64,000 nt of DNA, from positions 1 through 64,000 of IMG/VR virus record IMGVR_UViG_3300047560_000921; one strand, written 5' to 3'. The number at the start of each line of letters is the position of its first letter. Position 1 is the first letter of the stretch. Position numbers and translations under genes: made by a program. Under the pieces are notes generated by a model. The model saw only the letters and a program-made list of their open reading frames with translations, had not been told where the DNA came from and did no database searches. Positions 22,117 to 54,292 of the stretch are shown here, piece after piece.

Positions 22117-22456
22117 GTTAGTAGAGTTCAGAAGTATAGACTTACTACATTGTTGGTCTAAACAATTTTTCAATCCGTATCTCAATCGTCTTTATCAAGA
22201 CAACATCAGTTATGTGCAACGTTGGTATTTTGAAGTTGCACACTGTTTCAATTTAGAAAATACCACAGCCGTATCAAAACAATTAATTTACGACCATGAA
22301 TTTAGAGAAGGGCTCATTAAGGCCTGTGATTTAGATTTTGACCGTTGTCAGCATTATGCACAGTACGCCGAGTATGAAGCGGCCGCACTGTACTGGATGC
22401 CAAAGTTAAAACGCTGGAAAGGCAAGTTTGTTGCTTGCCGTTCACTTGCCGCGTAG
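22061..22456 (+). CDS. hypothetical protein (131 aa)
   Basis: ORF track; last gene of the plus-strand operon. Confidence 0.65.
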   Translation: MTAKVIPFPITQPAQPQYKLVEFRSIDLLHCWSKQFFNPYLNRLYQDNISYVQRWYFEVAHCFNLENTTAVSKQLIYDHEFREGLIKACDLDFDRCQHYAQYAEYEAAALYWMPKLKRWKGKFVACRSLAA

Positions 22457-25400
22457 TTCAATCAATTCTGCTTTTACAGCATCTAGCTCTGCTTTTAAGT
22501 CTTTGATACTTTCAATCAATAGACCCACCATGCTGCCGTAGTTAACAGATAGGATGTCGCCTTCATGTCCTGCTTTAACTGCTTCTGGTAATACCTTTTG
22601 TACTTCCTGAGCAATTACACCAGTACCATGAGTCTTGGTATCGATACGTGTAAATGTTACACCACGTAGTTGTAATACTTTTCCTAACGCATCTGGAATA
22701 ACTTGTACATTCTCTTTTAGTCTAGCGTCAGAGTAAGCTGTAACTTCACCCGTTGCAGTAATGTCGCCGCGACAGTCTAATGCGCCATGACGCATACCAG
22801 TGTAGCCTGTGCCTGCACTCCAGCCGTATGTGCTGAATACGTTATCGGTATCTAAACCAAAGTGAGCGCCGTATACACCTTCTCTGTGGAAGCTGATGTT
22901 ACATGCACCGCTACCTGCGTTGTTGATTTCCAATTGGCTGCTGTTACCTGTTGCCAACGTTACGCCAGTCATACGTGGAGTAATTTTAGCAGTAGTTTGT
23001 AAACCAGCAAACCAACTGTAGCCAGCGCCGATGCCGCCACTTACAACTAATGCACCACTAGCAGTGCTAGAACTTCCAGTTGTATTAGTAATGCTGATTG
23101 CGCTACCTGTACTGCTTCCGCGGCCGGTTACACTACTTAATGTGTCTGCTTCAGTTGCAGTTACAGTTACAGTCTTGTTTGTGCTGTTAAAGCTAACGCT
23201 GGCAATACCTGCGCCAGCAAAACGTAAACTGTCAGTATTTGAACCTGCACTGAATTGGGTAGTACCTGCACTGTCTGCAATGTTCTTGAAGATATTTTGT
23301 GCAGAACCTTTATCAGTGTTAGTTACACGCAATGCCACGTTAGTAGTATCAACGTCAACATCAACACCGGCGCCACTTACTACACGTAAGTTTGTACCAA
23401 CTGCACTTGTACCAGTTGCGCTCCATATAAATCCGCTGTCCGAATCAACTGCCTGGACTGTTTGTAGTGCGCTTAGTGTTGTTGTGCTTAGACTTGTAAT
23501 GTGGCCAGATGCGTTGACAGCAATAACCGGAATAGCATTACTTGCACCGTATGTACCACTTGTAACACCGCTGTTAGCGTGAGTCAATGTTACTGAACCT
23601 GTGCTTGCACTTGCTACAATTGGAGTTGTAGCTGTGATGCTAGTTACACCAGTGTTAGTGATTGTAACTGCACCAGTGGCGCCACTTACACTAATACCTG
23701 TGCCGGCCACGTTGCTTGTTACACCTGTGTTAGTTACTGTAACTGCGGCGTTGTTAGTTCCACTACCACTAATACTAATACCAGTGCCTGCACCAACTGT
23801 AGCGACATAGTTGCCAGAAGTTTCTGTACTTAAACTGATTGTAGCTGAACCAAAACGGATATCATAGTAGTTAGTTCCGTCATTGGTAATTTGCCATTTG
23901 CCGCTAGATCCGTTTTCTAACCAACGTAGTGCCGTTGTAGCTTGTGCTCCGCGGCGCACTTCGATACCTGCGTTCTCTGTCGGAGTACCGCTAGTATAGT
24001 CACTATTCAATGTAACGATATTATCTGCTACGCTTAATGTAGCAGTGTTGATTGTTGTAGTTGTACCTGCAACAGTTAAGTTTCCGCCTACGTACAAGTT
24101 CTTAGCAATACCAACACCACCTGTTACTATTACAGAACCAGTTGTTGCACTAGTAGAATCTGTTGCGTCAGAGAATGTACTTGGCACTACATGACTTACA
24201 GAACTTGCCGTTATAGTCATAGCGTTGTTAATGTTTAAGCTAGATGTATTTGAGTTAAACGCAATACCTGTGCTGGCAACACCTATCGTCTTATTGCCTG
24301 AACCAGTTGTTGTAACCCAAGTTGGATACAATACTGTGTTAGTGCTGTAGTCACTGACTGCTACTGTGCTTGCATTTACACTAGTTAAACCAGATCCGTT
24401 GCCTGTCACAGTTCCGCCAACTTGCAAGTTGCCGCCGATACCTACACCGCCTGTTACAACTACTGCACCAGTCGATGTGGTTGTACTAGCAGTTGCATTG
24501 GTAAATGTTACTGCTGTACTTGTTGTTGCTCCGCGGCTTGTAACAGTTGCCAGTGTATCTGTTTCGGCGAATGATGTCACGCTACCGCTTATTACACGAC
24601 CTTTGGCATCAACTGTTACAGTGTTGTATGTGCCTGCTGTGACGCCAGTGTTAGAAAGAGTTGCTGTAATACTTGTGCTACCCGATCCACTAACGTCGCC
24701 GCTAATGCTAATAGTTTGGTTGCCTGTCAGGTAAGCAGTATTTGAACCTGCTGTTACACGACCTTTAGTGTCTACAGTTACAGTGTTGTATGTACCTGCA
24801 CCGACTCCGCTAGTTGCTAAGGTTGCTGTATTTGAACCAGCGTTAATTGTAATATCACCGCTAATAGCTGGTTGAATGATTTGCCATGTGCTACCTGTGT
24901 CGCGATATAATGTGTTAACTGTAGTATCAATATACATACGGCCAACTGTACCTGCCGCTGGGCGGTTTACAGTTGTATCAACTTGTACGCTTACTGCATT
25001 ACCCGCATTGATAACTTGCAAGCTGTTGGCAACGTTTGCCAAGCCCACATCCGTTTTGGTCAATGAAACTGCGCCTGTCTTACCAGCTACGCTAGAAACA
25101 GGATATACAATGCTTAGGTTACCTACTTGAGTAACTTGGCCTTTGCTGTTAACTGTTAACTGTGGCACTGCTGTAGTAGTACCGTACTGGCCGATGGTTG
25201 CGTTTACATCTGCCAATGTTAAGTTAATGCTAGTAGTTCCAGAACCAGTTGCATCTCCACTTACTGTAATAGTCTGGTTACCTGTAATATATGATGCGTT
25301 GCTGCCGCTAGTTACACGACCTTTGGCGTCAACTGTAACAGTGTTATATGTACCTGCGCTTACGCCTGTAGTTGCCAATGTTGCTGTTGTACCGCCGGCA

Positions 25401-28400
25401 CTGATTGCAATATCACCTGTAATTGCAGGAGTTTGTAATTCCCAACCAGTACCAGAATCTCTATAAATGCTTCTTGTATCTGTACTAATCCAAATACGGC
25501 CAGCAGTACCGAACAATGGTCTTGTGCTAGCAATACCTTGTGCAATGCTAGGCGTGTTGCCTGCATTAATAACTTGTAAACTGTTTACAACGTTGTTTAA
25601 TCCAACATCAGTATTAGTTAAAGTAACTGCACCTGTCTTACCAGCTACACTAGACACTGCATTGACTACGGCATTTGTTGTTACGCTAGTAATACGACCT
25701 TTGGCATCAACAGTAAAGCTAGGAATCGACGATCCAGTACCATATGTACCAGCAGTAACACCGGTTACCATCAATGATGTAGATATACTAGTTGTACCAG
25801 AACCTGTTACGTCACCGTTAAGTGTAATCGTTTGATTACCGGTTAGATATGCGGTATTTAAACCAGTTGTTACACGACCATATGCATCTACAGAAACTGT
25901 GTTATATGTGCCTGCGGTGACACCAGTAGTAGCTAAGTCAATGTTGTCTGCGTTAACAACAATGCGACTTGTACTTGCTGTACCAATATCAAGCTGGCTG
26001 TAAGTTTTGTACAGGCCGGCACCGGCTGTCACTTGCGGAGCACTTAAGAATACACCAAATGTTAGTGGAGTAACGTCTAGTGTAATCGGAGCAGGAGTTG
26101 TTAATACAAAACTGTAAGCGGCAAAAGTATCACCGTATAGAACAGGCATATAAACGCCGGTTTGCATTTCAGCTGAAGAATTCAAGTCTACGCTACGAGC
26201 CCATGGGCCAGCGGCTGCAACATATACACCGTTTTGACTAGCTGTGTTTTGTGCTTTAACTAAAACTCTATCACCTGCAACAAGTTGATAGTTGTCAATC
26301 ATTGGCAAGCCCGACAACGTAATGTCAGCAGTCGTTGCCACTGCCACTGGATCTTTGGCAGAAATGTTTGATAATCCGTAAAGAGCTTGATCTACGTATG
26401 CTTTGCTTGCGGCGTGTGCTGGTAAATCTGGAGTCAATACAGACAAGTAACCAGCCATAGAATCACCTGCTCGGTTAACAGGAGTATATCCAAGAGTAGT
26501 TGTAATGTCGCTATCAGTTAATGGCACATTACTTGCACTAGTAATACGGCCTTTACCGTCGATAACCAATTGCGGGAAAGTCACGCCGCCGCCATATGTG
26601 CCCGATGTAACACCCGTTGATGCTAATGTTAAACCTGCACTTACGTTACCAGATCCATTGAAGTTTACGGTCCAGCTAGCATCGCCTGTAGCAGTAATAC
26701 TACGAGTTGTTTGTAGTGTGCCAGCTGTGCTTGCATTGCCGCTTAAACTAGCAGTGATAGTTCCTGCGCTAAAGTTACCGACTGCATCCCTGTAAACAAT
26801 AGTACTTGGAGTATTTGCATTGGTTGCATTGCTGGTAATAATACCAGTCAACGAATCGTAACTTAATCCGTTACCACTTACGCTGATAGCACTTCTTGCT
26901 CTTGCATTAGTAAAGAATAGCTTGCTTATACCTTCTATAATACCGTCGGTATTTGGTGTTGTATAACTCATTACACCTGTTGCACTGTTGTACGACAAGT
27001 TTCCGCTTGCACTAATGCTACTACGAGCTCGTAGCGTTGTAAAGTATAAGTTGTTGTAACCTTCTAAAATTTCATCGGTAGTGTCTTTAGTAGCAACAGC
27101 GTCGTCTACATATTGTTTTGTTGCCAATTGGTTTGGCATAGTAGGGGCATTGGCGCTAACTGTTCCGTTAACTTGTAGAGCATCGATGCCATTATCAAAA
27201 GAATTAATCAATACACGGCCAGCGCCGTTGACTTTAAGCCTATCGTTGCCAGCGGTAACAATACTAATCTCGTTGGCTGCTGGGCTAAACAATCCTGCCG
27301 ATGTAGTCGTGCCAAAGTACAAGCCAGGGTCAGTTACAGTACCAATAGCAAGTCCAAGTGCTCCGGACATTACGTCTCCTGCACGGTTAACTGGAGTGTA
27401 ACCCAGGTAATTCTTAATGTCTAAACTGGTTAATTGGCTACCTGCAAATGCGCGGCCTTTACTATCTACACTTAGCTTTGTGTATGTACCGCTGGTAATA
27501 CCAGTTGTGCTCAGCGTACTGTTTCCTGCGTTTGCAGGAATAATAACATCACCAGTTACAGCTGGTCGTAAAATTTCCCATGCACCACCGTTGTCACGAG
27601 CAATACTTAATGTATCTGTAGCAATATACAAACGTCCGACTACACTGGCAGCAGGACGGTTAGCAGTTAAGCCTGCAAGTACACCAGGAACGTTACCATA
27701 GTTAACTACTTGGACTTGGTTAGTAACGTTACTCAAACTAACATCGCTAGGTGTTAGCACAATAGCACCGTAACGTCCTGCTACACTAGTAACAGGGAAA
27801 GCAATAGGATTATCCTGTGCTGTGATAATTCTACCTTTGCTATCGACAATAGCAGAGAATGAACTTGTTGTGCTACCGTATGTTCCAGCAGATACGCCAG
27901 TGTCTGCTAATGTAGTAGTAATGTTTGTTGTACCAGTACCAGTTACATCTCCGTTGATAGTAATCGATTCGTTGGCTGTTAGGAATACTTCGCTGCCTAA
28001 TGCAGTAATGCGGCCTTTAGTGTCAATAGTTAAACCATTCCATGTACCCGCAGTAACGCCTGTGTCAGCAAGAGTAATAGCAATGTCAGTTTTACCTGTA
28101 CCGGTTGCATCACCGGTAAAGTTTAATGTTTGGTTTTCAGTTAGATAATTATTTTCTACTGCCCCAACAACACGGCCGTATTCGTCGATGGTTAAACCAT
28201 TATATGTACCTTGTAGTACATCTACAATGGCCAAGTCTAAGCCGGCCGCATTGGCAGTAATTCTACTTGCATTACCTAGTTTGGCGCTTAATGTATTTCC
28301 GGAAAACTCAATGCCTGGGCCAGCTACTAAACTACCTACGCCAGTGAACTGCACAAAGTCCAATGGAGTTACATCAAGTTCCACTGTTTCTTTAGTAGTT

Positions 28401-28849
28401 AAAATCCAACCAGTTCTAGCCCATTGCTGGCCTTCTGTAACAAGGGCATACATACCAGATGTAATGTCAGAGCTAGTGTTTGCATCCTCTGCTCGTGTTA
28501 ACGGTACACCAGCGCCGTTATATGTATAGATACCGTTTTGGGGTCTAAATGTTTGTCCTACTAGGAAAATTCTATCGCCGGCTTGCGGATCATGTCCGTC
28601 AATTTCAGCAGGTGCTATAGCAATGTTAATATTGTTGCGAGCAAGTAAATGACAGTTAGCTTTTACGTCTAAGCCTTGGGCAACACTGTCCACATAGGCT
28701 TTAGTTACAGCATGATTTAAGTCTGTAGGAGGTTGTTGTAGCACTAAGTGGCCACGGATTACTTCTAAATCACCTACTTCGTTAACTAGAATTTGATCCT
28801 GGTTATCAGTGTTTAAGATGTACTTACTTTGAGCTTTGGTTTTTAGCAT
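22442..28849 (-). CDS. long tail fibre protein (2135 aa) with C-terminal intramolecular chaperone (peptidase S74-type)
   Basis: About 12 'GTY..VTVD.KGRV' repeats; C-terminal 'YSDARLKENV...GVIAQEV...VNYG'; TAAATA at 28876-28881. Confidence 0.88.
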   Translation of the reverse strand: MLKTKAQSKYILNTDNQDQILVNEVGDLEVIRGHLVLQQPPTDLNHAVTKAYVDSVAQGLDVKANCHLLARNNINIAIAPAEIDGHDPQAGDRIFLVGQTFRPQNGIYTYNGAGVPLTRAEDANTSSDITSGMYALVTEGQQWARTGWILTTKETVELDVTPLDFVQFTGVGSLVAGPGIEFSGNTLSAKLGNASRITANAAGLDLAIVDVLQGTYNGLTIDEYGRVVGAVENNYLTENQTLNFTGDATGTGKTDIAITLADTGVTAGTWNGLTIDTKGRITALGSEVFLTANESITINGDVTGTGTTNITTTLADTGVSAGTYGSTTSSFSAIVDSKGRIITAQDNPIAFPVTSVAGRYGAIVLTPSDVSLSNVTNQVQVVNYGNVPGVLAGLTANRPAASVVGRLYIATDTLSIARDNGGAWEILRPAVTGDVIIPANAGNSTLSTTGITSGTYTKLSVDSKGRAFAGSQLTSLDIKNYLGYTPVNRAGDVMSGALGLAIGTVTDPGLYFGTTTSAGLFSPAANEISIVTAGNDRLKVNGAGRVLINSFDNGIDALQVNGTVSANAPTMPNQLATKQYVDDAVATKDTTDEILEGYNNLYFTTLRARSSISASGNLSYNSATGVMSYTTPNTDGIIEGISKLFFTNARARSAISVSGNGLSYDSLTGIITSNATNANTPSTIVYRDAVGNFSAGTITASLSGNASTAGTLQTTRSITATGDASWTVNFNGSGNVSAGLTLASTGVTSGTYGGGVTFPQLVIDGKGRITSASNVPLTDSDITTTLGYTPVNRAGDSMAGYLSVLTPDLPAHAASKAYVDQALYGLSNISAKDPVAVATTADITLSGLPMIDNYQLVAGDRVLVKAQNTASQNGVYVAAAGPWARSVDLNSSAEMQTGVYMPVLYGDTFAAYSFVLTTPAPITLDVTPLTFGVFLSAPQVTAGAGLYKTYSQLDIGTASTSRIVVNADNIDLATTGVTAGTYNTVSVDAYGRVTTGLNTAYLTGNQTITLNGDVTGSGTTSISTSLMVTGVTAGTYGTGSSIPSFTVDAKGRITSVTTNAVVNAVSSVAGKTGAVTLTNTDVGLNNVVNSLQVINAGNTPSIAQGIASTRPLFGTAGRIWISTDTRSIYRDSGTGWELQTPAITGDIAISAGGTTATLATTGVSAGTYNTVTVDAKGRVTSGSNASYITGNQTITVSGDATGSGTTSINLTLADVNATIGQYGTTTAVPQLTVNSKGQVTQVGNLSIVYPVSSVAGKTGAVSLTKTDVGLANVANSLQVINAGNAVSVQVDTTVNRPAAGTVGRMYIDTTVNTLYRDTGSTWQIIQPAISGDITINAGSNTATLATSGVGAGTYNTVTVDTKGRVTAGSNTAYLTGNQTISISGDVSGSGSTSITATLSNTGVTAGTYNTVTVDAKGRVISGSVTSFAETDTLATVTSRGATTSTAVTFTNATASTTTSTGAVVVTGGVGIGGNLQVGGTVTGNGSGLTSVNASTVAVSDYSTNTVLYPTWVTTTGSGNKTIGVASTGIAFNSNTSSLNINNAMTITASSVSHVVPSTFSDATDSTSATTGSVIVTGGVGIAKNLYVGGNLTVAGTTTTINTATLSVADNIVTLNSDYTSGTPTENAGIEVRRGAQATTALRWLENGSSGKWQITNDGTNYYDIRFGSATISLSTETSGNYVATVGAGTGISISGSGTNNAAVTVTNTGVTSNVAGTGISVSGATGAVTITNTGVTSITATTPIVASASTGSVTLTHANSGVTSGTYGASNAIPVIAVNASGHITSLSTTTLSALQTVQAVDSDSGFIWSATGTSAVGTNLRVVSGAGVDVDVDTTNVALRVTNTDKGSAQNIFKNIADSAGTTQFSAGSNTDSLRFAGAGIASVSFNSTNKTVTVTATEADTLSSVTGRGSSTGSAISITNTTGSSSTASGALVVSGGIGAGYSWFAGLQTTAKITPRMTGVTLATGNSSQLEINNAGSGACNISFHREGVYGAHFGLDTDNVFSTYGWSAGTGYTGMRHGALDCRGDITATGEVTAYSDARLKENVQVIPDALGKVLQLRGVTFTRIDTKTHGTGVIAQEVQKVLPEAVKAGHEGDILSVNYGSMVGLLIESIKDLKAELDAVKAELIELRGK

Positions 28850-44169: not shown

Positions 44170-44177
44170 TATTTATA
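44170..44177 (-). promoter_or_regulatory. T4-consensus late promoter TATAAATA
   Basis: Exact T4 late consensus heading the fibre cluster. Confidence 0.7.
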
Positions 44178-50130: not shown

Positions 50131-52260
50131 TTAACCGTAAGCCCCTGCCTGTTCAACAGCTTTGCCAGTTCTTTCAGTATTATCTGCAATAACTTTCTGT
50201 TGGGCAACACCGGCTTTAGTAGCATCTGCCATATCCTGCATTAATTGCATTTGCGCTTTTTGTACGTCTGCTTGGGTTCCATATGAATATGATTCACGTT
50301 TAGTTGCGGCTGCAACCACTGAACTACTAGCATCACTTACTTCGCTACCCATAACAGGATTGCCCATAGCATCTGTCTGCGAAGGACCTGACGCCATATC
50401 GTCTTTACTAATACCTAGAACTTTACGGCCTAGCCATGAGCTCTTTAGCCAATCCCATAATAGTGTAAATGGTTGCATTGCAAACTCGCCAACTTTGGCT
50501 AACATCTTAAATGGCAAAGATATAACATCAAATAATACTGATGCCAAGCCCTTTGCAAGATCCCACAATAGGCCAGGTACATTACCTAGTCCTGTTGCTA
50601 GTGAATCCCAAATCTTTTCAAAGTTTAATTCAACTAGACCTTCTACTACACCCGACAGAGTATCAAATAAATTCTTAAAGATTGCCCACACTGGTTTAAT
50701 TACTTTAAAGGTTTCTCCAATTACCCATCCCAGTGATTTGAAAACTGGCATTAACAACGATTTAGTAATATTAATTAACGACCCTAATACATCAACGGCG
50801 ATAGACAATGTATCAGATAAGCCATCGATCATTTCTTCCGGGATTAAGTCGATAAATCCAAACAGTTTGCTACTTAATTTTTCAAATGTAGCACCCATCT
50901 TTTCGCTGATGCTTTTTAATTTTTCTTCTGCACGGCCTTTGGCTTTCATTGCTTCAAGCTCTTCGGTACTCATTTCTGTATATTTTTTAGCACTATTATA
51001 CATATCAAGCAGTCGCTTGGCGCTAGCATCGCCTTGTTGTGCTAACAACTGCAAGGTAGGAATGTTAGGTGCCATACTGCTGACCATGGCTTGTGCGCTG
51101 GCACCAAATTCACCTGCGCTAACTGTATTGTCTTTTAATTTCTTTTGGAAGTTGTCTAATACTTGAATATCAGCAAACGGTGCAATTTCTTGACCTAGCT
51201 TGGTGTTAATAATACTCAAACCTGCGCTTTGTGCTTCTGCAACTTGATTGAATAGTTCTTTACCTATCTGACCAAAAACTGCTTCAAAGCCGCTTGCACC
51301 ACGTGCTAGTGCTTCTACTGCTTCGCCTGTGCTACGACCAAATGCACGTAGACCGTTAATAATAACTGGACTCTTTAACAAGTCACCTAGGCTCTTTTTC
51401 ATTGCATTCATATCAGCACCTGTTGCAATGCTAACTTTACGCAATGTTTCTAAACTTTTACCGTATGCATGTGCGGCGCCGCTTACTGCATCGGCACCTT
51501 TAGCGCCTGTTGCGGCAAATACATTAATAAAGTCTGCACTGCCCTTGGCTAAGTCTGAGGCACTCATACCAAACGTGCCATAAGTGTCTCTTACTTGTGT
51601 TTGTAAGTCACCAAACGCACGGGCAGCATCCATACCATTTGAGCCTAGTGCTCTGTATGCTTGACCTGTTTCTTTTAATGCACCATAAAAACTCTTTAAT
51701 GCTAGTCCGCTGTTAGCGGCAATTTCTGCACTTTCGCCTAATTTGCTACTATAACCCAAGCCAGCATTAACCATGTCTTCCATGCTGTCAAGGTATTCTT
51801 TAGTTTTATTGGCCAGCATCATTAAGCCTTGTGCGCCTACTTGTAATGCTAGTCCCCATGGACCGCCCATCATTGATCCAATGGCAGACATACCACTACT
51901 CATGGTGCCCATTGCACCGGCAAAGCTATTACTACTACCAGCTATTTTGTATAATTCTTTAGAACCTTGGAATGCAGCGGTGCCTAGCATACCTAGTGTA
52001 CTGCTGTGACGCAGAGCGTTTGTGCCCATATCGCCAAAATTCTTTTTAAGTGTCTTGGCTGTTTCGCCTAAATCATCTAATTGTTCTGCTGGATTTTTAG
52101 TAGCAGGTGCGCCGCCGCCTGCTTTTCCTGCACTTGCACCAGTGGCGCCGGCACTACCACCGCCAAACTTATCTAGCAGTTTAAGTAGCGTTTCTTCTGT
52201 TGCCCATTGCGGTCTACTCGACCCGTCGGGTAAGTTAATATCCTGTGGTGGTTTAGCCAT
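50131..52260 (-). CDS. probable tape measure protein
   Basis: 709 aa, Ala/Gly-rich helical with W/F-spaced amphipathic region; divergent from the gp26-like gene. Confidence 0.65.
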   Translation of the reverse strand: MAKPPQDINLPDGSSRPQWATEETLLKLLDKFGGGSAGATGASAGKAGGGAPATKNPAEQLDDLGETAKTLKKNFGDMGTNALRHSSTLGMLGTAAFQGSKELYKIAGSSNSFAGAMGTMSSGMSAIGSMMGGPWGLALQVGAQGLMMLANKTKEYLDSMEDMVNAGLGYSSKLGESAEIAANSGLALKSFYGALKETGQAYRALGSNGMDAARAFGDLQTQVRDTYGTFGMSASDLAKGSADFINVFAATGAKGADAVSGAAHAYGKSLETLRKVSIATGADMNAMKKSLGDLLKSPVIINGLRAFGRSTGEAVEALARGASGFEAVFGQIGKELFNQVAEAQSAGLSIINTKLGQEIAPFADIQVLDNFQKKLKDNTVSAGEFGASAQAMVSSMAPNIPTLQLLAQQGDASAKRLLDMYNSAKKYTEMSTEELEAMKAKGRAEEKLKSISEKMGATFEKLSSKLFGFIDLIPEEMIDGLSDTLSIAVDVLGSLINITKSLLMPVFKSLGWVIGETFKVIKPVWAIFKNLFDTLSGVVEGLVELNFEKIWDSLATGLGNVPGLLWDLAKGLASVLFDVISLPFKMLAKVGEFAMQPFTLLWDWLKSSWLGRKVLGISKDDMASGPSQTDAMGNPVMGSEVSDASSSVVAAATKRESYSYGTQADVQKAQMQLMQDMADATKAGVAQQKVIADNTERTGKAVEQAGAYG

Positions 52261-52270
52261 TATCTATGTA

Positions 52271-52298
52271 TATAAATACTCCAGTACACTATTATTTA
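52271..52298. promoter_or_regulatory. face-to-face late promoters (+ TATAAATA 52271-52278; - TAAATA 52293-52298)
   Basis: Each box points at the ATG of the divergent gene on the far side. Confidence 0.6.
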
Positions 52299-52312
52299 TC
52301 GGAGTAAAAACC

Positions 52313-53158
52313 ATGGAAAACACACGCACAAACCCACTGATTCAATACAATCGCAGGCCAGCCAGATATGTTAAGTTGCCTAGCATGGGCAAATGCTATC
52401 TTAAAGGGATCGACTTAACAGATACTAACGAAGTAGCTGTGTATCCAATGACTGCCAAAGACGAACTATTATTGAAAAGCCCAGATGCATTGCTTAACGG
52501 CGAGTCTATCAAGCAAGTATTCAAGGCTTGTGTACCTGGCATTGTAGATCCAAACGAAATCCCTATTATCGACCAAGATGCTATTATGGTTGGTATTCGC
52601 ATGGCCACGTATGGCGACCATATGGAATTAGACTTTACTCATGATTGTGAACCTGATGCTGTTACACAAGTTAACGTTAACTTGGGTTCTATTTTAGATA
52701 GCACTACATTCTACGGCGGTGATGTTGAAGTTGTATTACCTAGCAGTGGTATGCGAGTATTCGTTAAGCCTTATACACTAGTGGAACAAAACAAAGTTAA
52801 TATTGCTGGATTTGAAGAAATGGCTAAAAGCCAACAAGTTGAAGCAGAAGTCAAAGAACAGTTACAAAAGCTAAAAATGGCAGGCAAGAGCTTTACCCGC
52901 TTGCTAGATGCAACACTAGACTTGATTACTGCCAGCATTGACAAAGTTATCACGCCCGACAATCAAGAGTTCATCGACAAGCGCATGATCCGCGAATGGG
53001 TTACTACTATTAGTAAACCGGAATTTGACTTAATAGATCGCGCTCTTAAAAGCATTACCGAAGTAGGCGTTAATAGTAAAATCACAGTTAAGTGCGCCAA
53101 ATGCGGACAAGACTATGAAGCTGAGCTAACTTTCAACCCTAGCGATTTTTTCGGTTAA
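52313..53158 (+). CDS. gp26: baseplate hub / tail assembly chaperone (gp26-like)
   Basis: Start MENTRTNPL (ATG 52313); 'LPS.G..Y', 'MTAKDEL.L', 'IR.ATYG', C-terminal CxxC and 'FNPSDFFG'. Confidence 0.75.
   Translation: MENTRTNPLIQYNRRPARYVKLPSMGKCYLKGIDLTDTNEVAVYPMTAKDELLLKSPDALLNGESIKQVFKACVPGIVDPNEIPIIDQDAIMVGIRMATYGDHMELDFTHDCEPDAVTQVNVNLGSILDSTTFYGGDVEVVLPSSGMRVFVKPYTLVEQNKVNIAGFEEMAKSQQVEAEVKEQLQKLKMAGKSFTRLLDATLDLITASIDKVITPDNQEFIDKRMIREWVTTISKPEFDLIDRALKSITEVGVNSKITVKCAKCGQDYEAELTFNPSDFFG
53146..53152 (+). other. -1 ribosomal frameshift slippery heptamer T TTT TTC
   Basis: In-frame X XXY YYZ immediately before the last sense codon; the -1 frame is open from 53143 to the stop at 53388. 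Confidence 0.6.
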
Positions 53159-53193
53159 GGCTTTCTCAATTACTGAAAGAGCCCGCTAAACTA

Positions 53194-53388
53194 ATGCAAT
53201 TCGTTAGCTCTTTCGAAAAAGACCAGAAGGCCATACAAAAAGATTTAATGCTATTAGCCATATACAGCGGAATGCCTTACAGCGAAATCTATAACTTATG
53301 CCCAGAAGAACGCAATGCTCTTTCCGAGGCATTACAGTATAAAGCTGAACAAGAAGAAAGAGCAATGAAAGAATCGACAAGAAGATAA
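53194..53388 (+). CDS. gp51-like / tail-chaperone extension ORF, possibly made as a frameshift fusion
   Basis: 'GMPYSEIYNLCPEER' resembles tail-chaperone C-terminal extensions; no strong SD. Confidence 0.6.
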   Translation: MQFVSSFEKDQKAIQKDLMLLAIYSGMPYSEIYNLCPEERNALSEALQYKAEQEERAMKESTRR

Positions 53389-53863
53389 TAGCTGTGTAAA
53401 CACAGCTTATTCTTCACTTTACTGCGTAAAGCTCGAATAATTTATTGTTTAATAATTGTTGAATGATTAAGTATTATCCTGAGTTCAGTCACACTTAGCC
53501 TTAAGCAAAGGCCAAGTATTCGAGACATTATCCTTCATCCATATGTCACACTCTAAATAAGCAACTTGTTTTGACCAAGTAAGGGCGGTTCCGCTGTACC
53601 CTTTTACGCTAGACTTAAACGCAACTACACAACACTTTTAGAGCAGTTTGTGTAACCTGTGAGTTGTAATTGTCAACAGAGCTCACTCTTTTCAGCTTTA
53701 CATATACTAAACCCAGTTCTTTTCAAGCAATTGAACTTCGTCCTGTTAAGGATAGTGGTTTTAGTCTCTGCTACGGCGCAGAAGTTCCATCCCTGTGCTC
53801 ACGCTTGGCCAGGTATAGGATCCCTTAATATGCGGCCGGGACTGGGCCTTTCCGTAGTTGTTA
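53389..53863 (-). ncRNA. candidate large structured non-coding RNA (~475 nt), family unrecognised
   Basis: Only long ORF-free gap in the window; at least 9 hairpins, several needing G-U pairs possible only on the minus strand; putative 8-bp pseudoknot. Confidence 0.6.
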
Positions 53864-54292
53864 TTAGAGTTTGTTTATAATGTGGGAGCCATGGACGCGA
53901 ACTTGAATGTGCCCGTTGTAATAATCTGCTGATTCCAGTACTCTGTGAGTAAACTGTTCTCTAGCTTCTATGTACGAGCATTGAGCCTTAGATGTACAGT
54001 AAAATAAGATTTCTCTAGTAAAATTATCTTTACCTAGGGTCTCTACGTCCTTGTTGAGTTCAATGTTTGAGCCAAAATATTCGCGCCAATCAGAATCGAT
54101 TTTGCTACGAATTTTCTTTTTCTTTTTTGTGCCGTTTTTGAGTTTAACTGTTTTGTATGTGGTTTTAGAGAATTTTGCTAATTTCTTGCCGATGTATTTG
54201 CGGCCTGTTGCATTATTTGTGATAATGTAAACAAACCCAATACAATCTTCCGGAAGTGCTTCCACTTCAACTCCCTGATATAGCCAAGTCAT
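53864..54292 (-). CDS. stand-alone GIY-YIG family endonuclease (142 aa)
   Basis: GFVYIIT....RKYIGKK, 'YFGS', conserved E (YIEAREQ) and YYN; Lys-rich insertion; no C-terminal DNA-binding domain. Confidence 0.8.
   Translation of the reverse strand: MTWLYQGVEVEALPEDCIGFVYIITNNATGRKYIGKKLAKFSKTTYKTVKLKNGTKKKKKIRSKIDSDWREYFGSNIELNKDVETLGKDNFTREILFYCTSKAQCSYIEAREQFTHRVLESADYYNGHIQVRVHGSHIINKL

What the first reader, a model, noticed from the sequence alone, without database searches (positions are those of the whole stretch)
53140..53388. Programmed -1 frameshift fusing the gp26-like and gp51-like ORFs (lambda G/GT-style) in a T4-like phage
Seen: the gp26-like gene ends GAT TTT TTC GGT TAA, giving an in-frame X XXY YYZ heptamer T TTT TTC (53146-53152). 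The -1 frame opens right after a TAG at 53140 and runs with no stop (RLRLSQLLKEPAKL-MQFV...) into the 64-aa ORF, which lacks a strong SD. Predicted products are 281 aa and about 358 aa. The gene is adjacent to the putative tape measure. Established: tail assembly chaperones of long-tailed phages use this frameshift. Inference: this gp26/gp51-like pair is the chaperone G/GT equivalent. I saw no clear downstream stimulatory structure.
Basis: partly seen in the sequence, partly recalled or inferred. Interest (0 to 1): 0.62.

Follow-up and report, generated by a model that had tools for sequence, protein, structure and literature searches.

The report
Tail-chaperone frameshift in a jumbo phage
The T4 gp26-like gene of this uncultured freshwater jumbo phage very probably makes a short and a long protein by a programmed -1 ribosomal frameshift, a way of making tail assembly chaperones already described for T4-like phages, so this is a real but unannotated new example.

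Summary
The gp26-like gene (52313-53158, PF12322) ends GAT TTT TTC GGT TAA. The heptamer T_TTT_TTC (53146-53152) is in phase. The -1 frame opens at 53143 and runs to TAA 53386-53388, giving products of 281 and 358 aa.

Comparison makes chance untenable. All 83 related IMG/VR loci that could be scored, plus phages Atu_ph07, 121Q, Ettore, S-PM2, P-SSM2, HTVC008M and KVP40, carry an in-phase slippery heptamer just before the stop. Each has a -1 extension of about 55-79 codons. The -1 peptide is conserved from the slip site itself (FFRxRLL...). Start codons in that frame are erratic, and Ettore has none.

A stem-loop with covarying arms starts 4-7 nt after the heptamer.

Genomes with the frameshift have one PF12322 gene. 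T4 has two: gp26, the short form, and gp51, the long form in one frame.

[quoted passage not shown] I could not read that paper. The kind is therefore known, and this window is a new, unannotated member from a jumbo-phage clade. No protein or reporter evidence exists.

The parts
52271..52278 (+). TATAAATA, identical to the T4 late-promoter consensus, 35 nt before the start codon; possible late promoter of the unit
   Evidence: one of only two copies in the window, which is not more than chance. That TATAAATA is the T4 late-promoter consensus is from my own knowledge. This is a lead, not a finding.
52313..53158 (+). gp26-like gene in the zero frame, 281 aa: the short product (the TAC-N of the literature)
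   Evidence: PF12322 T4_baseplate 67.3 bits against a cut-off of 24.5. phrog_150 baseplate hub 8e-22. AF2 model pLDDT 89.5. Best solved match is the HK97 tail assembly chaperone 2ob9, Z 6.7, 103 of 107 residues aligned.
53146..53152 (+). slippery heptamer T_TTT_TTC in X_XXY_YYZ phase; tRNA-Phe in both the P and A sites can re-pair one base back
   Evidence: The heptamer is kept in phase in all 83 scored IMG/VR loci and 7 cultured phages. The preceding codon always ends in T although its amino acid varies (N, S, T, D, H, A). Eight loci have A_AAT_TTT instead.
53143..53388 (+). open -1 frame, stop codon included; residues added after the shift are encoded by 53152-53385 (78 aa), giving a 358-aa long product
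   Evidence: The -1 peptide is conserved from the slip site (A3). Substitutions in the linker fall 289/173/534 on -1-frame codon positions 1/2/3. AF2 model of the 80 residues has pLDDT 92 with four helices, and the 'intergenic' part forms helix 1.
53159..53232 (+). predicted two-tier RNA stem-loop, 6 nt after the heptamer: outer stem 53159-53166 / 53225-53232, inner stem 53174-53182 / 53207-53215
   Evidence: -21.3 kcal/mol, z -2.42, 3 of 200 shuffles fold as well. In 77 distinct loci a helix starting 4-7 nt after the heptamer has a median of 9 bp, against 5.3 at control positions. On A6 the outer stem is 89% paired, with 21 double-change cells against 6.0 in shuffles, 0 of 500.
53194..53388 (+). 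the 64-aa ATG ORF that a gene caller would list separately; read here as the 3' part of the long product, not a gene of its own
   Evidence: The ATG is not conserved (GCA in L006 and L007). The conserved peptide starts 16 codons upstream of it.
53390..53407 (+). terminator-like hairpin AGCTGTG-TAAA-CACAGCT followed by a T-rich tail, directly after the -1 stop codon
   Evidence: It is conserved in L001-L004.
50131..52260 (-). divergently transcribed 709-aa protein, putative tape measure: the presumed client of the chaperone
   Evidence: Weak matches to tape-measure PHROGs (1.6e-5 and 1.6e-3). The same position between portal and gp26-like gene is seen in 121Q ('virion structural protein') and Ettore. 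There is no significant BLASTP match to T4 gp29.

Best explanation
The gp26-like gene and the 64-aa ORF behind it are one recoded gene. Most ribosomes stop at TAA 53156 and make a 281-aa protein. A fraction slips back one base on U_UUU_UUC while tRNA-Phe occupies both the P and A sites. The slip is probably helped by an RNA stem-loop that begins 6 nt further on. Those ribosomes then read CGG UUA AGG ... to UAA 53386 and make a 358-aa protein with the same N-terminal 280 residues plus a 78-residue helical domain. By homology (PF12322) and position next to the putative tape measure, the pair is the tail assembly chaperone of this T4-like jumbo phage: the equivalents of lambda G and GT and of T4 gp26 and gp51. 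What is shown: the signal, the open frame, and their conservation and coding signature. What is inferred: that ribosomes actually shift, at what rate, and that the short part binds the tape measure while the added domain recruits a tail-tube or hub partner.
For: Sequence as described. All 83 scored IMG/VR loci (33-95% identical) and Atu_ph07, 121Q and Ettore have an in-phase heptamer within 28 nt of the stop and a -1 frame open for 69-79 further codons; the +1 frame is mostly open for fewer than 20. S-PM2, P-SSM2, HTVC008M and KVP40 show the same with shorter extensions, about 55-62 codons. The codon before the heptamer always ends in T while its amino acid varies. Eight loci use the different but equally valid A_AAT_TTT. 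The -1 peptide is conserved from the slip site (FFRxRLL), upstream of any start codon, and start codons are erratic or absent. The linker between the zero-frame stop and the ATG is nucleotide-invariant in the four closest relatives. It shows third-position-biased substitution in the -1 frame and is part of a confidently folded helix. The downstream helix has compensatory changes and a movable 3' arm. There is one PF12322 gene in each genome that has the signal, against two in T4, where gp51 is the PF12322 domain plus about 48 extra C-terminal residues in frame. The cyanophage and KVP40 extensions align without gaps to the gp51 C-terminus starting at the FF. The best solved structural match is the HK97 tail assembly chaperone. 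Literature.
Against: There is no direct evidence of the 358-aa protein, no peptide across the junction and no reporter assay. U_UUU_UUC is not among the heptamers I know to be most efficient in E. coli, and the host here is unknown. The window's own outer stem is only 8 bp with one G-U pair and is not significant by itself (12% of control positions do as well). RNAalifold found no consensus on the mixed set. The stem lies in coding sequence and I derived it from the same sequences used to test it. The fold match to a chaperone is middling (Z 6.7; Foldseek E 0.3). The extension does not match phrog_634 and its link to gp51 is weak (E 9e-5). Tape-measure identity of the neighbour is weakly supported. 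The related loci are not phylogenetically independent.
Confidence: 0.85

Rival explanations
1. There are two ordinary genes. The small ORF is translated on its own from ATG 53194, perhaps by coupling to termination at TAA 53156. The heptamer is only the codons of a conserved Phe-Phe at the C-terminus.
For: An ATG exists in the window and in its four closest relatives. Public records annotate the small ORF separately (121Q gp595, S-PM2 gp51, KVP40.0327). T4 gp26 also keeps ..EFFELL without a slippery sequence, so FF has some protein-level value.
Against: The ATG is GCA in L006 and L007. The first start codon ranges from -126 to +186 nt from the heptamer and is missing in Ettore. About 16 conserved residues lie upstream of the window's ATG. 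The third base of the codon before FF is always T while its amino acid varies, and TTT TTC or TTT TTT is used rather than TTC TTT. Eight loci replace FF by the heptamer A_AAT_TTT. The linker shows a coding signature in the -1 frame.
Confidence: 0.05
2. The long product is made by transcriptional slippage. RNA polymerase adds one U in the T6 run, so a minority of mRNAs carry the two parts in one frame.
For: The site is a homopolymer run, and RM378 has a T7 run with the extension in the other frame. The title of Vladimirov et al. [quoted passage not shown]
Against: The run is only 6 T, and 5 T in the A_AAT_TTT loci. That is shorter than the runs of about 7-9 or more known to me to slip in bacteria. 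The run is always in X_XXY_YYZ phase with the zero frame, which matters for ribosomes but not for polymerase. A conserved helix sits at the spacing typical of ribosomal stimulators. Contigs from RNA libraries that span the site show no inserted base, although contigs drop rare variants. PMC10885494 paraphrases the 'other mechanism' as T4's two separate genes.
Confidence: 0.07
3. It is an assembly or sequencing error, or a decaying gene: one 358-aa gene broken by a one-base deletion in a homopolymer.
For: Homopolymer runs are error-prone. T4 gp51 shows that an in-frame long form is viable.
Against: The same run length, the same frame relation and a zero-frame stop 1-6 codons later recur in more than 80 independent assemblies and in finished genomes of cultured, viable phages. 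Runs from several studies hold the stretch without an indel.
Confidence: 0.01

Closest known systems
[quoted passage not shown]
   Same: Same protein family (PF12322, T4 gp26/gp51), the same poly-T slip site at the 3' end of the short gene, and the same short and long pair. The S-PM2, P-SSM2, HTVC008M and KVP40 genes I checked have the identical arrangement.
   Different: The window belongs to a jumbo-phage clade whose nearest cultured relatives are Atu_ph07, 121Q/PBECO4, RaK2, GAP32, CBB and PA5oct-like phages at 27-33% identity. Its short part is longer (about 280 aa) and its extension is longer (78 aa) and not recognised by phrog_634. The gene lies head-to-head with the putative tape measure, next to the portal gene. 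I cannot tell whether that paper covered this clade or the downstream stem-loop.
T4 gp26 and gp51
   Same: Both are PF12322 (8.8e-64 and 3.9e-52). gp51 equals the gp26-type domain plus about 48 C-terminal residues. Both are listed as hub assembly chaperones absent from or uncertain in the virion.
   Different: T4 uses two divergently transcribed paralogous genes and no frameshift. Gene 26 reads GAG TTC TTT GAG, which is not slippery, and gene 25 follows it.
Lambda G/GT and the conserved -1 frameshift of long-tailed phages (Levin et al. 1993; Xu et al. 2004, as described in PMC5009743)
   Same: [quoted passage not shown]
   Different: There is no detectable sequence similarity. The heptamer differs. 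Lambda's genes lie between tube and tape measure on one strand, whereas here the tape-measure candidate is divergent. The fold similarity to the HK97 chaperone is only Z 6.7.
T7 gene 10A/10B frameshift
   Same: A -1 slip on a U-rich Phe site (GGUUUUC, from my own knowledge; mentioned in PMC12846349).
   Different: It is a capsid protein, an imperfect heptamer and an unrelated gene.

Membership tests
PF12322 T4_baseplate (gp26/gp51 family) | Match to the Pfam model above the gathering score | tested here: met
   67.3 bits against a cut-off of 24.5, residues 37-280, model positions 11-218 of 219. It is the only such gene in the 231-kb record.
Canonical -1 programmed ribosomal frameshift site | X_XXY_YYZ heptamer in phase with the zero frame, inside the overlap of the two frames | tested here: met
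   T_TTT_TTC at 53146-53152. The overlap window is 53143-53158. It is conserved in phase in all scored homologues.
Canonical -1 programmed ribosomal frameshift site | Stimulatory RNA structure 5-9 nt downstream | tested here: met
   In silico only. The stem-loop starts 6 nt downstream, z -2.42. Family-wide the helix has a median of 9 bp against 5.3 at control positions. Covariation exceeds all 500 shuffles. RNAalifold on the mixed alignment found none.
Canonical -1 programmed ribosomal frameshift site | Trans-frame protein actually made | not testable with these tools
   It needs mass spectrometry, western blot or a reporter assay. RNA-library contigs only show that the region is present without an indel.
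Phage tail assembly chaperone (lambda G/GT type) | Short and long products sharing the N-terminus, with the gene next to the tape measure gene | tested here: inconclusive
   The two-product architecture is met. The neighbour is only a weak tape-measure match (1.6e-5; no match to T4 gp29) and is divergently oriented.
Phage tail assembly chaperone (lambda G/GT type) | Chaperone fold | tested here: inconclusive
   HK97 chaperone 2ob9 is the top VIA match (Z 6.7, rmsd 5.0, 103 of 107 residues) but lies below the level the tool calls safe. Foldseek gives E 0.31.
Phage tail assembly chaperone (lambda G/GT type) | Binds the tape measure; the long form binds the tube; absent from virions | not testable with these tools
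   The one complex prediction gave no verdict (see Tried and rejected).
gp51 C-terminal domain / small 'gp51' ORFs of cyanophages (phrog_634) | Match of the extension to the family profile | tested here: not met
   phrog_634 finds S-PM2 (2.6e-32) and KVP40 (1.3e-22) but not the window's genome, 121Q or Ettore. There is no Pfam or PHROG hit. Only a profile-profile hint exists: E 6e-4 and 9e-5 over about 28 residues at the equivalent C-terminal place.

The most novel reading that the evidence does not exclude
The frameshift is stimulated by a so far undescribed, family-wide RNA helix. Its 5' arm is fixed 4-7 nt after the slip site, inside the codons for the conserved R-L-L. Its 3' arm has moved during evolution, giving loops of 11 to 58 nt. 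The jumbo-phage clade carries a distinct, longer (78 aa, four-helix) chaperone C-domain that is not the gp51 tail, implying a different tail partner. T4's FF (TTC TTT) would be the fossil of the lost slip site.
Probability: 0.35. Interest if true: 0.45.

Novelty: new member of a known kind. Interest (0 to 1): 0.33.

Why it matters
For annotation: the small ORF behind gp26-like genes is listed as a separate hypothetical gene, as 'gp51', or not at all, in every record I looked at (121Q, Atu_ph07, Ettore, S-PM2, KVP40). It should instead be a joined CDS with ribosomal slippage. For biology: the result extends the near-universal short and long chaperone rule of long-tailed phages to a clade of jumbo myoviruses. 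It also gives cultured relatives in which the slip site and its stem-loop can be tested. It does not open a new kind of mechanism.

Tried and rejected
1. blastn of the region against GenBank phages found nothing, so relatives had to be found by protein.

2. RNAalifold on 30 mixed sequences gave no consensus structure. The helix became visible only when the 3' arm was allowed to lie at different distances.

3. Complex prediction of the 709-aa neighbour with the 281-aa protein gave no verdict (score 0.00). This is neither for nor against binding.

4. Foldseek of the extension model against BFVD gave only small uncharacterised phage proteins and no gp51.

5. Foldseek of the gp26-like model against PDB gave no match at E <= 0.001.

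6. BLASTP of the neighbour against T4 gp29 was not significant.

7. PF28602, which the protein database lists on gp51 homologues, is not in the local Pfam copy, so its name and reach are unknown.

8. The fused 358-aa sequence could not be handed to the profile or fold tools, because a -1 junction has no reference. The two parts were analysed apart, and the joined step was done only inside scripts for peptide printing.

9. The key paper (Virology 2022) is not held.

10. Sequencing error and independent initiation were considered and rejected (see rivals).

Full report
WHAT IS THERE. The window is the first 64 kb of a 231,384-base IMG/VR virus record, judged 65% complete. It comes from freshwater metagenomes. 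Around the finding lies a T4-type structural block on the minus strand: major head protein (phrog_138, 7.7e-101), head protease and tail-fibre-like proteins, a gp20-type portal (PF07230, 2.5e-106) and a 709-aa protein with weak tape-measure matches. Divergent from that block, on the plus strand, is a 281-aa gene (52313-53158). It matches PF12322 T4_baseplate at 67.3 bits against a cut-off of 24.5 and phrog_150 'baseplate hub'.

The gene ends GAT TTT TTC GGT TAA. T_TTT_TTC (53146-53152) is an X_XXY_YYZ heptamer in phase. The -1 frame has its last stop at 53140-53142 and is then open to TAA 53386-53388. It contains the 64-aa ATG ORF 53194-53388. A terminator-like hairpin follows at 53390-53407. 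The predicted products are 281 aa and 280 + 78 = 358 aa.

IS IT MORE THAN CHANCE? A pattern search with the protein, and then with an alignment of 29 diverse homologues (A2), brought in 84 IMG/VR loci that are 33-95% identical to the window protein. One of them runs off its contig. In all 83 others a script found three things:
- an in-phase slippery heptamer within 28 nt of the zero-frame stop: T_TTT_TTC in most, T_TTT_TTT in three, A_AAT_TTT in eight;
- a -1 frame open from before the heptamer;
- 69-79 further open codons in the -1 frame, against mostly fewer than 20 in the +1 frame.

The cultured jumbo phages Atu_ph07, E. coli 121Q and Pseudomonas Ettore behave alike.

Among 32 clusters below 60% identity, in-phase heptamers occur at 0.39% of internal codons, so about 4% of ten-codon windows would hold one. 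Stops occur at 10% of -1 codons inside the genes. The codon before the heptamer is AAT, AGT, ACT, GAT, CAT, TCT or GCT. The amino acid changes but the final T does not. That is what a nucleotide signal, not a protein motif, looks like. The loci are related, so the naive product of probabilities is not a p-value. Even so, retention of the signal down to 27-33% protein identity is strong.

ONE GENE OR TWO? The -1 peptide is conserved from the slip site itself (FFRxRLL..., then ...WYMRG..S..EA..LS..ER...; A3). The first ATG, GTG or TTG of that frame lies anywhere from -126 to +186 nt from the heptamer. Ettore has none, and the window's ATG is GCA in the 66%-identical L006 and L007.

In the four closest relatives the stretch 53138-53196 is nucleotide-invariant except GGT to GGC, which is synonymous in both frames, while synonymous sites just upstream vary freely. 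Substitutions in the 14 codons after the slip fall 289/173/534 on -1-frame positions 1/2/3. For the part beyond the zero-frame stop the counts are 31/15/58. AlphaFold folds the 80 residues from the heptamer on into four helices with pLDDT 92, and the 'intergenic' part is helix 1. Independent initiation therefore cannot explain the conserved sequence.

THE STIMULATOR. RNAfold of 53153-53245 gives a two-tier stem-loop that starts 6 nt after the heptamer: 53159-53166 pairs with 53225-53232, and 53174-53182 pairs with 53207-53215. Its energy is -21.3 kcal/mol and z = -2.42.

In 77 distinct loci the best helix whose 5' arm starts 4-7 nt after the heptamer has a median of 9 bp. At control positions in the same genes the mean is 5.3. 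The arms change together: GGCTCTTG/CAAGAGCC, GGCTTTTG/CAAAAGCC, GGCTCCTG/CAGGAGCC, GACTCCTC/GAGGAGTC, AGCTCATCA/TGATGAGCT and GGCTTTCGAC/GTCGAAAGCC. The 3' arm lies 11 to 58 nt away in different clades.

On 29 sequences with the distant arm (A6) the eight pairs are 89% paired, against 28-64% when slid. There are 21 double-change cells against 6.0 +/- 1.8 in shuffles, and no shuffle of 500 does as well.

Several caveats apply. The helix lies in coding sequence. I derived it from these same sequences. RNAalifold on the mixed set found nothing. The window's own outer stem alone is unremarkable. The A_AAT_TTT group has weaker helices.

WHAT IT IS. T4 gp26 (208 aa) and gp51 (249 aa) both match PF12322, at 8.8e-64 and 3.9e-52. 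gp51 carries about 48 extra C-terminal residues. T4 gene 26 ends GAG TTC TTT GAG TTA CTA TAA, which is not slippery, and gene 25 follows it.

A six-frame search finds two PF12322 genes in T4. It finds one each in the window's record, Atu_ph07, 121Q, Ettore, S-PM2, P-SSM2, HTVC008M, KVP40 and RM378. In S-PM2, P-SSM2, HTVC008M and KVP40 that single gene also ends ...FF with T_TTT_TTC or T_TTT_TTT. Its -1 extension is the small ORF annotated as 'gp51'. That extension aligns without gaps to the gp51 C-terminus, starting exactly at the FF.

So T4's gp26 and gp51 are the two-gene version of the short and long pair that other T4-like phages make from one gene.

This is not new. PMC10885494 cites Vladimirov, Gautam & Davidson (Virology 2022). 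[quoted passage not shown] PMC12846349 cites the same paper for poly-T -1 signals in the TAC-N genes of T4-like phages. Leiman et al. 2010 list gp26 and gp51 as hub assembly chaperones. I could not read the 2022 paper itself.

The structural test agrees modestly with this reading. The AF2 model of the 281-aa protein (pLDDT 89.5) has the HK97 tail assembly chaperone 2ob9 as its best solved match by VIA-align (Z 6.7, 103 of 107 residues). Foldseek gives only E 0.31.

WHERE THE WINDOW DIFFERS. Its clade has a longer extension, 78 aa against about 48-60. The nearest cultured relatives are the jumbo phages listed. phrog_634 does not detect this extension, although it finds S-PM2 and KVP40. Pfam and PHROG scans find nothing. 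Profile-profile comparison with gp51 gives E 6e-4. With gp51 plus the cyanophage extensions it gives 9e-5, over about 28 residues around the shared S..E..(L/M)(S/P)..ER motif. 'gp51-like' is thus positional and probable, not shown. None of the public records I inspected annotates a joined CDS, and Ettore leaves the extension unannotated.

MECHANISM AND RIVALS. Tandem slippage of tRNA-Phe on U_UUU_UUC, aided by the helix, is the best account. I put it at about 0.85.

Transcriptional slippage is the main rival. The constant X_XXY_YYZ phase, the short run (6 T, and 5 T in the A_AAT_TTT loci), the spacing of the helix, and the absence of an inserted base in RNA-library contigs that span the site (weak evidence) all speak against it.

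Independent initiation and sequencing error are excluded as general explanations by the comparative data.

Function is inferred by homology and analogy. The shared N-part would coat the tape measure and the added domain would recruit a tail partner. The one complex prediction gave no verdict.

VERDICT. It is a new, unannotated member of a kind described in 2022. Interest is modest.

Noticed in passing
window 53864-54292 (-): A 142-aa SegE-type GIY-YIG homing endonuclease (PF19835, 6.5e-33) sits directly behind the terminator of the chaperone gene. It may be a mobile insertion at a conserved structural locus.
   Followed up: no
L105 (Rhodothermus phage RM378, NC_004735 about 26440-26700): The single PF12322 gene ends ..ESFFWNKL with a T7 run (TCC TTT TTT TGG) and no in-phase heptamer. 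A 76-aa extension is open in the +1 frame, not the -1 frame. This could be an old homopolymer sequencing error, a +1/-2 shift or transcriptional slippage.
   Followed up: no
L088 2803-2860 (T4 gene 26, 3' end): T4 gp26 keeps the Phe-Phe (..KEFFELL) but encodes it TTC TTT after GAG, so the site is not slippery. It looks like the fossil of the ancestral slip site after the gene was duplicated into 26 and 51.
   Followed up: partly
window 52271-52278 (+) and 44170-44177 (-): These are the only two copies of TATAAATA in the window; by my own knowledge this is the T4 late-promoter consensus. One lies 35 nt before the chaperone gene's ATG and the other lies between the major head gene and the next structural gene. 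The count is not above chance.
   Followed up: partly
window 53103-53330: Many freshwater metagenomes and four metatranscriptome runs hold only 6-17% of the words of 52300-53450. Laid contigs show that the slip site, linker and extension are the best-kept part: 3-8 differences in 150-190 nt, against 13-20 in the gene body. The nucleotide conservation is unusually high.
   Followed up: partly
proteins P0124-P0215 (T4-type gp51 homologues): The protein database lists a second Pfam family, PF28602, on gp51 homologues but not on gp26-type proteins. It is absent from the local Pfam copy. It presumably models the gp51 C-terminal tail.
   Followed up: partly
window 22442-28849 (-): A 2135-aa ORF lies in the structural region. 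It was not examined.
   Followed up: no
L087 3352-3576 (Pseudomonas phage Ettore, OR805294): The 75-residue -1 extension has no ATG, GTG or TTG at all and the stretch is left unannotated in the record. This is the cleanest natural case against independent initiation.
   Followed up: yes
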